Source of the DNA: Anthoceros angustus
Taxonomy: Eukaryota; Plantae; Anthocerotophyta
NCBI GenBank assembly: GCA_010909165.1
Contig: VJWM01000144.1
Location: 496,001-560,000 of the forward strand
DNA: 64,000 nucleotides
Direction of reading: 5' to 3'
Each line of letters starts with the position of its first letter. The first letter of the stretch is position 1. A program made the position numbers and the translations under genes. The notes under the pieces were generated by a model that was not told the origin of the DNA, ran no database searches, and saw only the letters and a list, made by a program, of their open reading frames with translations. Positions 13,617-14,456 of the stretch are shown here, piece after piece.

Positions 13617-13918
13617 ATGGTGAGCGCTTCGAAAGGGATTCTGATTTCATGGTAAGCTCGCACACCGCAACCGATTTTGGGCTGCCAGTCTGTGGCGTTT
13701 CTTCTTCTTATTCTGCGGTCTTGATGATGCTGTTTTGCAGTGACATACCTATGGCACAGTTTATTGTGAGTATGAATGACGCGATGCCCTCCTCTCAGAG
13801 GTTTATCGTGCAGGTGTTGGACGACACACACATCTTCGTGCAACCTCATGTGGCCGACATGATACAGAAGAGAATTCAAGAGTACAGGGAACAGAACACT
13901 TACGAGAAGCCGCTGTGA
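13617..13918 (+). CDS. TFB5: TFIIH subunit TFB5/p8 (GTF2H5), 71 aa, 2 exons
   Basis: Exons 13617-13651 and 13741-13918 give MVSASKGILISCDIPMAQFIVSMNDAMPSSQRFIVQVLDDTHIFVQPHVADMIQKRIQEYREQNTYEKPL, a typical plant Tfb5. Confidence 0.95.
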
Positions 13919-13938
13919 TTTTGGATGACCTAATCGAG

Positions 13939-14456
13939 ATGGATGGGCGGGAGACTGGTCCTGCTGTTGCTGGTACAGCCGACCCGTCGCATATGGAAGT
14001 GGGTGGCGGGGAGTCAGAGCTTCCAAGAGTTGTAGTGTATAGATGCAGGAAGTGTAGGGAACATGTGGTGAGTCAGAGCGATGCGATTGAACACAGTCCT
14101 GGTGGTGGGACGGCAAAAGGCTTTGCAGGCAAGAAAGGCGGAGATAAGCACTTGCGGGATGATCTGAAGCGCCCCGCGTGCTCCTCCATCTTCGTGGAGC
14201 CCAAAAAATGGATGACTTCAGGTAAATACAGCTGGGACCCGTTCTTAGGAGGTGAGAGATGTAGACTTGACGCAACGTTATTCCTCGCATGCGGTGTGCA
14301 GTGTCGGAAGGCGTGGTGGAAGGCAAGCTTTTCTGCGCTAGATGTCAAGCAAGGCTCGGGAATTTCAACTGGGCTGGTATGCAGTGCAGCTGCGGGTCGT
14401 GGGTGAATCCTGCTTTTCAGCTTCATAAAAGCAGAATGGATGCCTCGTGGTCCTGA
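13939..14456 (+). CDS. Stand-alone DUSP12/YVH1-type zinc-binding domain protein (no phosphatase domain), 2 exons
   Basis: YRCRKCREHVV...EHSPG...CSSIFVEPKKWM|VSEGVVEGKLFCARCQARLGNFNWAGMQCSCGSWVNPAFQLHKSRMD. Intron 14222-14301 (gtaaat...tgcag). Resembles the At4g18593-like family as remembered. Confidence 0.92.

What the first reader, a model, noticed from the sequence alone, without database searches (positions are those of the whole stretch)
13617..14456. TFB5 and a DUSP12-type zinc-binding protein are 20 nt apart: candidate bicistronic nuclear mRNA
Seen: TFB5 stops at 13918 and the next conserved gene starts at 13939 on the same strand, in the -1 frame. The 20-nt spacer (ttttggatgacctaatcgag) cannot hold a poly(A) site plus a promoter, and contains a micro-ORF, ATG ACC TAA (13925-13933). 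Both genes are intact and each has one normal intron. Known: bicistronic nuclear mRNAs exist in green algae and for Arabidopsis CDC26-TTM3, where a small essential subunit is the upstream ORF. Inference: a new plant bicistron with 71-aa TFB5 as the functional uORF. It could couple TFIIH supply to a YVH1-like zinc domain, a domain linked to 60S ribosome maturation.
Basis: partly seen in the sequence, partly recalled or inferred. Interest (0 to 1): 0.85.

Follow-up and report, generated by a model that had tools for sequence, protein, structure and literature searches.

The report
TFB5 plus YVH1-zinc-domain bicistronic mRNA
In a land plant (probably a hornwort) the tiny transcription/DNA-repair subunit TFB5 and a stand-alone ribosome-maturation zinc domain, cut off from a DUSP12/YVH1 gene, lie 20 bases apart and sit on one spliced RNA; two-protein messengers that start with TFB5 are already known from green algae and flies, so this is a new partner, not a new principle.

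Summary
TFB5 (70 aa, not 71; 13617-13651 + 13741-13918) ends 20 nt before the ATG (13939) of a 145-aa protein (13939-14221 + 14302-14456). That protein matches the C-terminal zinc domain of yeast Yvh1 over both exons.

In an RNA run of the same organism, both introns are spliced out. One contig runs unbroken from TFB5 exon 2 across the spacer and 122 nt into ORF2, at the same depth as TFB5. Co-transcription is therefore well supported. Translation of ORF2 is not shown.

ORF2 is the last two exons of a DUSP12 gene: its intron has the position and phase of the last intron of liverwort DUSP12. No phosphatase exons lie in the 64 kb.

The adjacency was absent from every other plant locus I could fetch (lycophytes, liverwort, Camellia, 34 metagenome loci). 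Arabidopsis has the two genes on different chromosomes.

TFB5 as first cistron is already known: Chlamydomonas REX1S-REX1B, and arthropod TFB5-Dmp18. This is a new variant of a known kind.

The TFB5 AUG has a strong context and 8 further AUGs precede ORF2. That argues against the algal leaky-scanning model and for termination-reinitiation (inferred).

The scan's first readers noted about a dozen other candidate bicistrons in this genome, none followed up.

The parts
13443..13449 (+). TATA-like box (TATATAT). It lies in the 81-nt RNA-free gap between the divergent WD40 gene and TFB5 and is flanked by 13-nt direct repeats at 13417 and 13455. Candidate promoter of the TFB5-ZN mRNA.
   Evidence: the only TATA-like motif in 13300-14100; no RNA contig covers 13413-13493 (contigs end at 13412 and resume at 13494). 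The promoter role is inferred.
13494..13616 (+). 5' UTR (minimum extent, at least 123 nt)
   Evidence: RNA contig record 2 of run X1 covers 13494-13651 at depth 29.
13617..13651 (+). TFB5 coding exon 1. The ATG context GCAATGG is strong (G at -3, G at +4).
   Evidence: RNA joint 13650>13740.
13652..13740 (+). TFB5 intron (GT..AG, 89 nt)
   Evidence: Joint 'skips 89', depth 27.3, and zero depth inside the intron.
13741..13918 (+). TFB5 coding exon 2, ending in TGA at 13916-13918
   Evidence: Pfam PF06331 E=5e-19. 74-77% identity to lycophyte TFB5.
13741..13797 (+). Segment skipped by a minor alternative 3' splice site (13797|13798). The skip is an in-frame loss of 19 codons and 4 AUGs.
   Evidence: Joint 13650>13798 at depth 9.9, against 27.3 for the main joint. 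Translation.
13919..13938 (+). 20-nt inter-ORF spacer. It ends in AG directly before the second ATG and lies about where the acceptor of the penultimate DUSP12 exon would be.
   Evidence: RNA contig record 4 (13798-14060) crosses it unbroken.
13925..13933 (+). Micro-ORF ATG ACC TAA (weak context)
13939..14221 (+). ZN (stand-alone YVH1/DUSP12 zinc-domain protein) coding exon 1. The ATG context GAGATGG is strong.
   Evidence: phmmer to Yvh1 6n8m_Y residues 221-291, E=6e-6. 62% identity to the C-terminus of Calypogeia DUSP12.
14222..14301 (+). ZN intron (GT..AG, 80 nt, phase 1). Same position and phase as the last intron of liverwort DUSP12.
   Evidence: RNA joint 'skips 80', depth 28.4. Phase comparison.
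14302..14456 (+). ZN coding exon 2, ending in TGA at 14454-14456
   Evidence: phmmer to Yvh1 residues 301-342, E=1e-10. All conserved Cys/His are kept.
14457..14675 (+). 3' UTR region shared with the 3' end of a convergent minus-strand gene (its stop is at 14676). The poly(A) site is not determined.
   Evidence: RNA contig record 6 runs from 14054 past 14800 and goes on for a further 1454 nt. Minus-strand ORF ending at 14676.

Best explanation
This is one RNA polymerase II transcription unit. It makes a spliced, capped mRNA that starts near 13475-13494 and carries two separate ORFs.

ORF1 is TFB5 (70 aa), the smallest TFIIH subunit. ORF2 starts 20 nt after the TFB5 stop. It is a 145-aa stand-alone copy of the YVH1/DUSP12 C-terminal zinc-binding domain. 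In yeast that domain alone binds pre-60S particles and releases Mrt4 so that P0 can load.

The locus arose when the last two exons of a DUSP12 gene came to lie directly behind TFB5. The phosphatase exons, the TFB5 terminator and any promoter for ORF2 were lost (inferred).

ORF2 is most likely translated by ribosomes that finish TFB5 and reinitiate a few nucleotides downstream (termination-reinitiation). Leaky scanning, the green-algal mechanism, is less likely. The TFB5 AUG is in a strong context, and eight more AUGs lie before the ORF2 AUG. All of their ORFs end upstream of that AUG.

Shown: gene structures, homologies, splicing, and RNA continuity across the spacer at even depth. Inferred: a single full-length molecule, translation of ORF2, the reinitiation mechanism, and the 60S function.
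For: Gene models and spacer.

Homology: the TFB5 Pfam hit. ZN matches the Yvh1 zinc domain collinearly over both exons. All conserved Cys/His ligands and motifs are kept in an alignment with 11 homologues.

RNA (run X1, same organism):
- Both introns are spliced, with depth about 0 inside them, so DNA contamination is excluded.
- Contig record 4 covers 13798-14060 unbroken at depth 37.8. That equals 27.3 + 9.9, the two exon1-exon2 joints.
- It overlaps the spliced TFB5 contigs by k-1 = 30 nt.
- The ORF2 contig has depth 28.4, so there is no rise that would indicate an internal promoter.
- X1 holds 100% of the sampled words of 13798-14060.

Sequence context: there is no TATA-like motif between the ORFs; the only one lies upstream of TFB5.

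Origin: the ZN intron has the position and phase of the last intron of Calypogeia DUSP12, and ZN exon 1 starts within a few codons of the start of the penultimate DUSP12 exon. No phosphatase exons lie in the 64 kb.

Function of the domain alone: yeast Yvh1 lacking its phosphatase domain complements yvh1-delta, binds 60S and releases Mrt4 (PMC2753163). Stand-alone versions are widespread in vascular plants.

Mechanism: AUG inventory and contexts.

Precedent for TFB5 as first cistron: PMC7896298, PMC11291117, PMC2276209, PMC9514664, PMC7013941.
Against: - The RNA evidence is one run, seen only as assembled k=31 contigs. Contigs show overlapping k-mers, not single molecules.
- The contig that crosses the spacer (ends 14060) and the contig with the rest of ORF2 (starts 14054) overlap by only 7 nt, and depth drops from 37.8 to 28.4. 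No single contig documents continuity through ORF2 exon 1.
- There is no Ribo-seq or proteomic evidence for ORF2.
- Reinitiation after a 70-codon ORF with a 20-nt spacer is usually inefficient. Such an mRNA should also be an NMD target, because an exon junction lies about 300 nt downstream of the TFB5 stop.
- The arrangement was found in no other species I could fetch, so I could not show conservation, and hence selection on the arrangement. No hornwort relative could be read.
Confidence: 0.62

Rival explanations
1. The long RNA is functionally a TFB5 mRNA only. The DUSP12 fragment behind it is a young, still intact gene remnant that serves as 3' UTR and is not translated, or only at noise level.
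For: - The strong TFB5 AUG and eight further upstream AUGs make access to the ORF2 AUG difficult.
- The arrangement is not seen in any other fetched plant locus.
- ORF2 is clearly a truncated piece of a larger gene.
- No translation data exist.
Against: - ORF2 is intact over two exons with a correctly spliced intron.
- It keeps every conserved Cys/His and motif and is 62% identical to a liverwort orthologue.
- It has acquired a start codon in strong context exactly at the old exon boundary.
- None of the upstream ORFs overlaps its AUG.
- The domain alone is functional in yeast (PMC2753163), and stand-alone versions have been fixed repeatedly in plants.
Confidence: 0.17
2. Two overlapping transcription units. 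ORF2 protein comes from a separate, less abundant monocistronic mRNA that starts inside TFB5 (intron or exon 2). The bicistronic RNA yields only TFB5.
For: - Contigs cannot separate overlapping transcripts.
- The genome is locally very compact, with 220-280 nt between neighbouring genes.
- In the polycistronic cases earlier reported from plants, monocistronic forms of the same genes were also seen (PMC7896298 introduction).
Against: - Depth does not rise between the TFB5 exon junction (37.2 summed) and the spacer contig (37.8). It falls to 28.4 over ORF2.
- There is no TATA-like motif inside TFB5.
- A minor internal start cannot be excluded with these data.
Confidence: 0.15
3. A TFB5-ZN fusion protein is made by a programmed -1 ribosomal frameshift. 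ORF2 lies in the -1 frame, and that frame is open for 53 codons upstream of its ATG.
For: The -1 frame is open from 13780 through the TFB5 stop into ORF2.
Against: - No slippery heptamer was seen in that stretch.
- An open run of 53 codons is expected by chance in about 8% of cases at this composition (my estimate).
- ORF2 has its own ATG in strong context.
Confidence: 0.02

Closest known systems
Chlamydomonas and other chlorophyte REX1 locus (REX1S = TFB5 homologue, followed by REX1B) on one bicistronic mRNA
   Same: TFB5 is the short first cistron. The inter-ORF spacer is very short (14 bp in Auxenochlorella). It is a nuclear, spliced, exclusively bicistronic transcript (PMC7896298, PMC11291117).
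   Different: The second cistron is unrelated. My recollection that REX1B is Pfam family PF14966 was not checked here; no Pfam family reached its cut-off on ORF2 at E<=1, and ORF2 matches the YVH1 zinc domain. Algal bicistrons use leaky scanning with weak ORF1 Kozak contexts and few AUGs. Here the ORF1 context is strong and 8 AUGs intervene.
Drosophila/arthropod CG31917: TFB5 (p8/Dmp8) as upstream ORF with Dmp18 (ZNHIT1/Swc6 homologue)
   Same: TFB5 is the upstream ORF of a bicistronic mRNA, and the partner is a small zinc-binding nuclear protein (PMC2276209, PMC9514664, PMC7013941).
   Different: The partner is a zf-HIT subunit of the SWR1/SRCAP chromatin remodeller, not related to the YVH1 zinc domain. 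It is an independent origin in animals.
CDC26-TTM3 bicistronic mRNA of land plants and green algae
   Same: A 65-aa essential subunit as ORF1 and a larger ORF2 on one plant nuclear mRNA. Interplay with NMD is expected for a uORF longer than 50 codons (PMC11291117).
   Different: Different proteins. CDC26-TTM3 is deeply conserved, whereas the TFB5-ZN pairing was found only here.
Arabidopsis At4g18593-type 'probable inactive dual specificity protein phosphatase-like' proteins, and the At4g18590 (RPA3B)-At4g18593 joint transcript
   Same: A stand-alone YVH1/DUSP12 zinc domain of 120-150 aa without phosphatase domain. In Arabidopsis it also occurs on Iso-seq transcripts that start in the upstream gene for a small DNA-repair/replication protein (PMC8827149, PMC3950690).
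   Different: In the tree the window protein sits with liverwort full-length DUSP12 (support 91/76), outside the seed-plant stand-alone clade (100/98). It is probably an independent truncation. The Camellia orthologue is monocistronic with a 148-nt leader. Arabidopsis TFB5 genes are on chromosome 1 (PMC9916837).
Yeast Yvh1 / human DUSP12
   Same: The zinc-binding domain is homologous over its whole length. In yeast this domain alone is sufficient for 60S binding and Mrt4 release (PMC2753163).
   Different: No N-terminal dual-specificity phosphatase domain is present in the ORF or anywhere in the 64-kb window.

Membership tests
TFB5 / TTDA / GTF2H5 (Pfam PF06331) | Significant match to the Tfb5 profile over nearly its full length, in a protein of about 70 aa | tested here: met
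   E=5.2e-19, 68.4 bits against a cut-off of 23.5, profile positions 13-66 of 67, on exon 2 alone. 77% identity over 70 aa to Diphasiastrum TFB5.
YVH1/DUSP12 C-terminal zinc-binding domain | Collinear sequence homology to the Yvh1 zinc-binding domain | tested here: met
   phmmer against PDB: Yvh1 6n8m_Y residues 221-291 (E=6e-6) and 301-342 (E=1e-10).
YVH1/DUSP12 C-terminal zinc-binding domain | Conserved Cys/His ligands: CxxC...H...C...CxxC...CxC...H | tested here: met
   All invariant Cys positions and the FVEP/W, LG.F.W.G.QCSCG.W..PAF motifs are kept in the alignment with 11 homologues.
Full-length DUSP12/YVH1 (atypical dual-specificity phosphatase) | N-terminal DSPc phosphatase domain with the HCxxGxxRS active site | tested here: not met
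   The ORF starts at the linker. tblastn with four full-length plant DUSP12 proteins finds no phosphatase exons in the 64 kb. No isoform is spliced into 13939 in the RNA contigs.
Full-length DUSP12/YVH1 (atypical dual-specificity phosphatase) | Function in Mrt4 release and 60S maturation | not testable with these tools
   Inferred only, from yeast Yvh1 lacking its phosphatase domain (PMC2753163).
Eukaryotic nuclear bicistronic mRNA (algal REX1 / plant CDC26-TTM3 type) | Two conserved non-overlapping ORFs on one strand, with a spacer too short for a terminator plus promoter | tested here: met
   20-nt spacer. Both ORFs are homologous to known proteins.
Eukaryotic nuclear bicistronic mRNA (algal REX1 / plant CDC26-TTM3 type) | A single mature transcript containing both ORFs | tested here: inconclusive
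   The RNA contig crosses the spacer at the same depth as TFB5, and both introns are spliced. However, the evidence is assembled contigs from one run, with a 7-nt-overlap break at 14054-14060.
Eukaryotic nuclear bicistronic mRNA (algal REX1 / plant CDC26-TTM3 type) | No (or only minor) monocistronic transcripts of ORF2 | tested here: inconclusive
   Depth does not rise downstream of TFB5 (37.2 > 37.8 > 28.4). Contig depths are means over whole contigs.
Eukaryotic nuclear bicistronic mRNA (algal REX1 / plant CDC26-TTM3 type) | Both proteins translated from that mRNA | not testable with these tools
   No Ribo-seq or proteomics access.
Eukaryotic nuclear bicistronic mRNA (algal REX1 / plant CDC26-TTM3 type) | Leaky-scanning signature: weak ORF1 Kozak context and few or no AUGs before ORF2 | tested here: not met
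   The ORF1 context is GCAAUGG (G at -3, G at +4). Eight further AUGs lie before the ORF2 AUG, and the 5' UTR is at least 123 nt.
Eukaryotic nuclear bicistronic mRNA (algal REX1 / plant CDC26-TTM3 type) | Conservation of the gene pair in related species | tested here: inconclusive
   Absent in the Diphasiastrum, Selaginella, Calypogeia and Camellia loci, in further unnamed TFB5 contigs (L003-L010) and in 34 metagenome loci. Close relatives (organisms B, C, E) hold 25-38% of the 31-mers of the junction stretch, but their sequence could not be read.

The most novel reading that the evidence does not exclude
The locus is one visible member of a genome-wide habit. This hornwort lineage would have kept, or re-evolved, green-alga-like bicistronic expression of small proteins (TFB5, CMC2, LTO1, SDHAF1, bL31m ...) in front of larger ORFs, which no paper in the searched library describes for hornworts. 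At this locus ORF2 would be reached by termination-reinitiation after a 70-codon ORF, not by the leaky scanning shown for algae. TFB5 itself would be a recurrent 'first cistron': this would be the third independently acquired partner (REX1B in algae, ZNHIT1 in arthropods, the YVH1 zinc domain here), with a possible fourth in Selaginella (TFB5 followed after 42 nt by a NOL9-type gene).
Probability: 0.3. Interest if true: 0.8.

Novelty: new variant of a known kind. Interest (0 to 1): 0.55.

Why it matters
Bicistronic nuclear mRNAs are well established in green algae, but in land plants they rest on very few cases (CDC26-TTM3).

This locus has direct RNA support for co-transcription of two spliced, conserved genes in a bryophyte-grade plant. 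The gene pair is not reported in the papers I could search.

It adds a third independent partner to TFB5, a protein that repeatedly ends up as the upstream cistron (algae, arthropods, here). That recurrence suggests something about very small, stoichiometrically needed subunits favours this arrangement.

Its AUG pattern does not fit the leaky-scanning model established for algae. It would therefore be a natural test case for reinitiation after a long upstream ORF in plants.

It also documents how such a bicistron can be born: a DUSP12 gene truncated to its last two exons, whose ribosome-binding zinc domain is known to work alone in yeast.

If the other candidate pairs noted in this genome hold up, hornworts would be a land-plant system for polycistronic expression.

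Tried and rejected
**Word-index search with ORF2 exon 1.** It found nothing. The HMMER search of representatives with exon 2 was needed to find relatives.

**Is ORF2 the 3' end of a larger DUSP12 gene with TFB5 nested in an intron?** Rejected. No phosphatase exons lie in the 64 kb, and the RNA contigs show no branch at 13939.

**Is ORF2 related to REX1B?** No Pfam family reached its cut-off on either exon.

**Is the pair conserved?**
- I fetched TFB5 loci from Diphasiastrum, Selaginella and eight unnamed contigs.
- I also fetched DUSP12/ZN loci from Calypogeia, Camellia, Selaginella and 34 metagenome contigs.
- No locus has both genes together.
- Hornwort relatives are not in the protein collections (best TFB5 hit 74-77%), so conservation within hornworts stayed untested.
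- The Sorghum look-up failed.

**Is the window protein an orthologue of the seed-plant At4g18593 stand-alone family?** The tree puts it with liverwort full-length DUSP12 instead. Support is weak and the alignment short (132 columns).

**Structured RNA in the region?** Rfam found nothing in 12000-16500 at E<=1.

**-1 frameshift fusion.** The frame is open, but no slippery site was seen.

**Not attempted.**
- Look-ups with the full spliced proteins, because they have no reference and I did not type long sequences.
- Structure prediction, because the sequence match to Yvh1 was already significant.
- I made no IRES or TURBS motif scan; a quick look by eye found no UGGGA core, which is not a test.
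Full report
**1. Observation**

The sequence is as described.

- TFB5 starts at 13617. It has a 35-nt first coding exon, an 89-nt GT..AG intron (13652-13740) and a second exon that ends with TGA at 13916-13918. The product is 70 aa, not 71.
- Exon 2 alone matches Pfam Tfb5 (PF06331) at E=5e-19. The protein is 74-77% identical to lycophyte TFB5.
- The spacer 13919-13938 is exactly 20 nt and contains ATG ACC TAA at 13925-13933.
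- The next ATG (13939) opens a 145-aa ORF in the -1 frame. It has one 80-nt GT..AG intron (14222-14301) and a stop at 14454-14456.

**2. What the second ORF is**

No Pfam family reaches its cut-off on it. Both exons do match the C-terminal zinc-binding domain of yeast Yvh1 in solved pre-60S structures: 6n8m_Y residues 221-291 at E=6e-6, and residues 301-342 at E=1e-10.

A HMMER search of 1.84 billion representatives with exon 2 gave 1599 hits. The best are full-length plant DUSP12 proteins of 300-370 aa with the domain at the C-terminus. They include Calypogeia fissa (62% identity over 114 aa), Sphagnum, Psilotum, Cryptomeria and Mesotaenium. An alignment shows that every conserved Cys/His and the family motifs are kept.

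tblastn with four full-length proteins finds no phosphatase exons anywhere in the 64-kb window. The ORF is therefore a stand-alone zinc domain.

Its intron lies at the same position and phase (phase 1, between WMT(S/A) and V.EG) as the last intron of the Calypogeia gene. Its first exon begins within a few codons of the start of the penultimate Calypogeia exon. An AG sits directly in front of the ATG.

ORF2 is thus the last two exons of a DUSP12 gene, copied or truncated at the genomic level, not a retrocopy.

**3. RNA evidence**

Only one read-laying run was allowed. Run X1 is from the same organism and sample as the DNA. It is clearly RNA: depth inside both introns is about 0, and both introns appear as GT..AG joints.

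Its contigs form a chain:

| Record | Span | Depth | Note |
|---|---|---|---|
| 2 | 13494-13651 | 29 | 5' UTR and exon 1 |
| 3 | 13622-13650 joined to 13740-13827 | 27.3 | main splice form |
| 5 | minor form joining 13650 to 13798 | 9.9 | alternative acceptor |
| 4 | 13798-14060 | 37.8 | unbroken |
| 6 | 14054-14218 joined to 14299-14800 and beyond | 28.4 | rest of ORF2 |

- Record 4 contains 121 nt of TFB5, the stop, the spacer, the second ATG and 122 nt of ORF2.
- Because k=31 exceeds the 20-nt spacer, individual k-mers contain both the TFB5 stop and the ORF2 start.
- Record 4's depth equals the sum of the two TFB5 splice forms. Essentially every TFB5 RNA therefore continues into ORF2.
- ORF2 depth is not higher than TFB5 depth, so ORF2 needs no promoter of its own.
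- X1 holds all sampled words of 13798-14060.
- The only TATA-like motif in 13300-14100 lies at 13443. It sits in the 81-nt RNA-free gap between TFB5 and the divergent WD40 gene.

Caveats:
- This is one run.
- Contigs are not molecules.
- Records 4 and 6 overlap by only 7 nt instead of 30, with a drop in depth. I cannot explain that.
- Record 6 runs on into the convergent downstream gene (stop at 14676), so the poly(A) site is unknown.

**4. Conservation of the pairing**

I found it nowhere else.

- TFB5 loci of Diphasiastrum and Selaginella and eight unnamed contigs have no ZN nearby.
- DUSP12/ZN loci of Calypogeia (10 kb flanks), Camellia and Selaginella (where TFB5 and ZN lie 1.35 Mb apart on one scaffold), and 34 metagenome contigs, have no TFB5 nearby.
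- Arabidopsis TFB5 genes are At1g12400 and At1g62886, and the zinc-domain gene is At4g18593 (PMC9916837).
- Hornwort relatives are missing from the protein collections.
- Three related organisms hold 25-38% of the 31-mers of the junction stretch, in both RNA and DNA runs for two of them (organism E's are DNA runs only).

Conservation within the lineage is therefore open.

**5. Stand-alone zinc domains in plants**

A search with the Calypogeia domain found 120-150-aa proteins named 'probable inactive dual specificity protein phosphatase-like At4g18593'. They occur in Selaginella, ferns, Ginkgo, Cryptomeria and many angiosperms. Full-length DUSP12 occurs beside them in ferns, conifers and angiosperms.

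A maximum-likelihood tree (33 rows, 132 columns) needs at least three origins of the stand-alone state. Seed-plant stand-alone proteins form their own clade (support 100/98). The window protein sits with liverwort full-length DUSP12 (91/76). The truncation here is probably independent, though support is modest.

In yeast, Yvh1 without its phosphatase domain complements the deletion, binds 60S and releases Mrt4. Yvh1 without the zinc domain does not (PMC2753163). A stand-alone domain is therefore plausibly a working 60S maturation factor (inference).

**6. Mechanism**

In the spliced mRNA the TFB5 AUG has G at -3 and G at +4, and the leader is at least 123 nt. Eight further AUGs (five in frame, three out of frame, counting the micro-ORF) precede the ORF2 AUG. 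All of their ORFs end before 13939. The ORF2 AUG itself has G at -3 and G at +4.

In green algae, ORF2 translation was shown to depend on leaky scanning past a weak ORF1 start, and even one added AUG abolished it (PMC11291117). This locus does not have that signature.

I therefore favour termination-reinitiation, but nothing here tests it.

As with CDC26-TTM3, a 70-codon upstream ORF followed by an exon junction should make the mRNA NMD-sensitive (inference from PMC11291117).

**7. Comparison with the known**

- TFB5 is already the first cistron of the Chlamydomonas/chlorophyte REX1 mRNA (REX1S-REX1B; PMC7896298, PMC11291117).
- It is also the first cistron of the arthropod TFB5-Dmp18 mRNA. 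TFB5 is listed as the uORF of CG31917 in PMC2276209; see also PMC9514664, and PMC7013941 ('in all arthropods').
- The partner here is different and unrelated.
- In Arabidopsis the zinc-domain gene At4g18593 occurs on Iso-seq transcripts that begin in the upstream RPA3B gene At4g18590 (PMC8827149, PMC3950690). That is a curious parallel, which I could not examine at sequence level.
- No paper in the library links hornworts with nuclear polycistronic mRNAs.

**8. Context from the scan**

These are unchecked AI notes, used as leads only. Other agents judged this genome a probable hornwort. My best hits (lycophyte TFB5, liverwort DUSP12) agree with a non-seed land plant but do not prove hornwort.

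First readers listed about a dozen other candidate bicistrons in the same genome. Examples are CMC2-HAL3, LTO1-SUV3, SDHAF1-MED7 and bL31m-unknown. None has been followed up.

**9. Verdict**

Co-transcription is well supported. Translation of ORF2 and the mechanism are inferred.

This is a new variant of a known kind, of moderate interest. Interest would be higher if the arrangement proves conserved in hornworts, or part of a genome-wide pattern.

Noticed in passing
window 13741-13797: About a quarter of the transcripts use an alternative 3' splice site at 13797|13798 (depth 9.9 against 27.3). This removes 19 codons of TFB5 in frame and four of the eight AUGs that lie before ORF2. It may give a non-functional TFB5 but a shorter, cleaner upstream ORF.
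   Followed up: partly
L002 5276-5323 (Selaginella moellendorffii GL377571.1): The Selaginella TFB5 stop (TAA 5276-5278) is followed by a 42-nt C-rich spacer without ATG. Then comes the annotated start (5321) of a CLP1_P/NOL9_C gene, another factor of 60S rRNA maturation. This is a possible further TFB5-first pair; it was not checked with RNA.
   Followed up: partly
window 14054-14060: The RNA contigs on either side overlap by only 7 nt instead of k-1 = 30, and depth drops from 37.8 to 28.4 inside ORF2 exon 1. The cause is unknown; it could be a dropped contig, a variant, a minor splice form or a poly(A) form.
   Followed up: no
window 13413-13493: An 81-nt stretch without RNA coverage lies between the divergent WD40 gene and TFB5. 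It holds TATATAT (13443) flanked by direct repeats TTGCCACCTTAGG at 13417 and 13455. It is a compact candidate bidirectional promoter.
   Followed up: partly
window 13780-13938: The reading frame of ORF2 (-1 relative to TFB5) is open for 53 codons upstream of its ATG, across the end of TFB5. No slippery site was seen, and this is probably chance.
   Followed up: partly
window 14457-14800 and beyond: The RNA contig with ORF2 continues 1454 nt past 14800 into a convergent minus-strand gene whose stop is at 14676. The 3' ends of the two transcription units overlap within about 220 nt.
   Followed up: no
proteins P0201-P0318; tree: Stand-alone YVH1/DUSP12 zinc-domain proteins (120-150 aa) coexist with full-length DUSP12 in ferns, conifers and angiosperms, and seem to have arisen at least three times. 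Some fern 'stand-alone' entries may be fragmentary gene models.
   Followed up: partly
Arabidopsis At4g18590-At4g18593 (literature, PMC8827149): Iso-seq and RT-PCR showed transcripts spanning the RPA3B gene and the zinc-domain gene At4g18593. The zinc-domain ORF is again downstream of a small DNA-repair/replication protein gene. I could not fetch the locus.
   Followed up: no
L053 9920-10001 (Selaginella): The Selaginella stand-alone zinc-domain gene starts 80 nt after the end of an upstream same-strand zf-CCCH/RING gene. This may simply reflect the compact genome.
   Followed up: no
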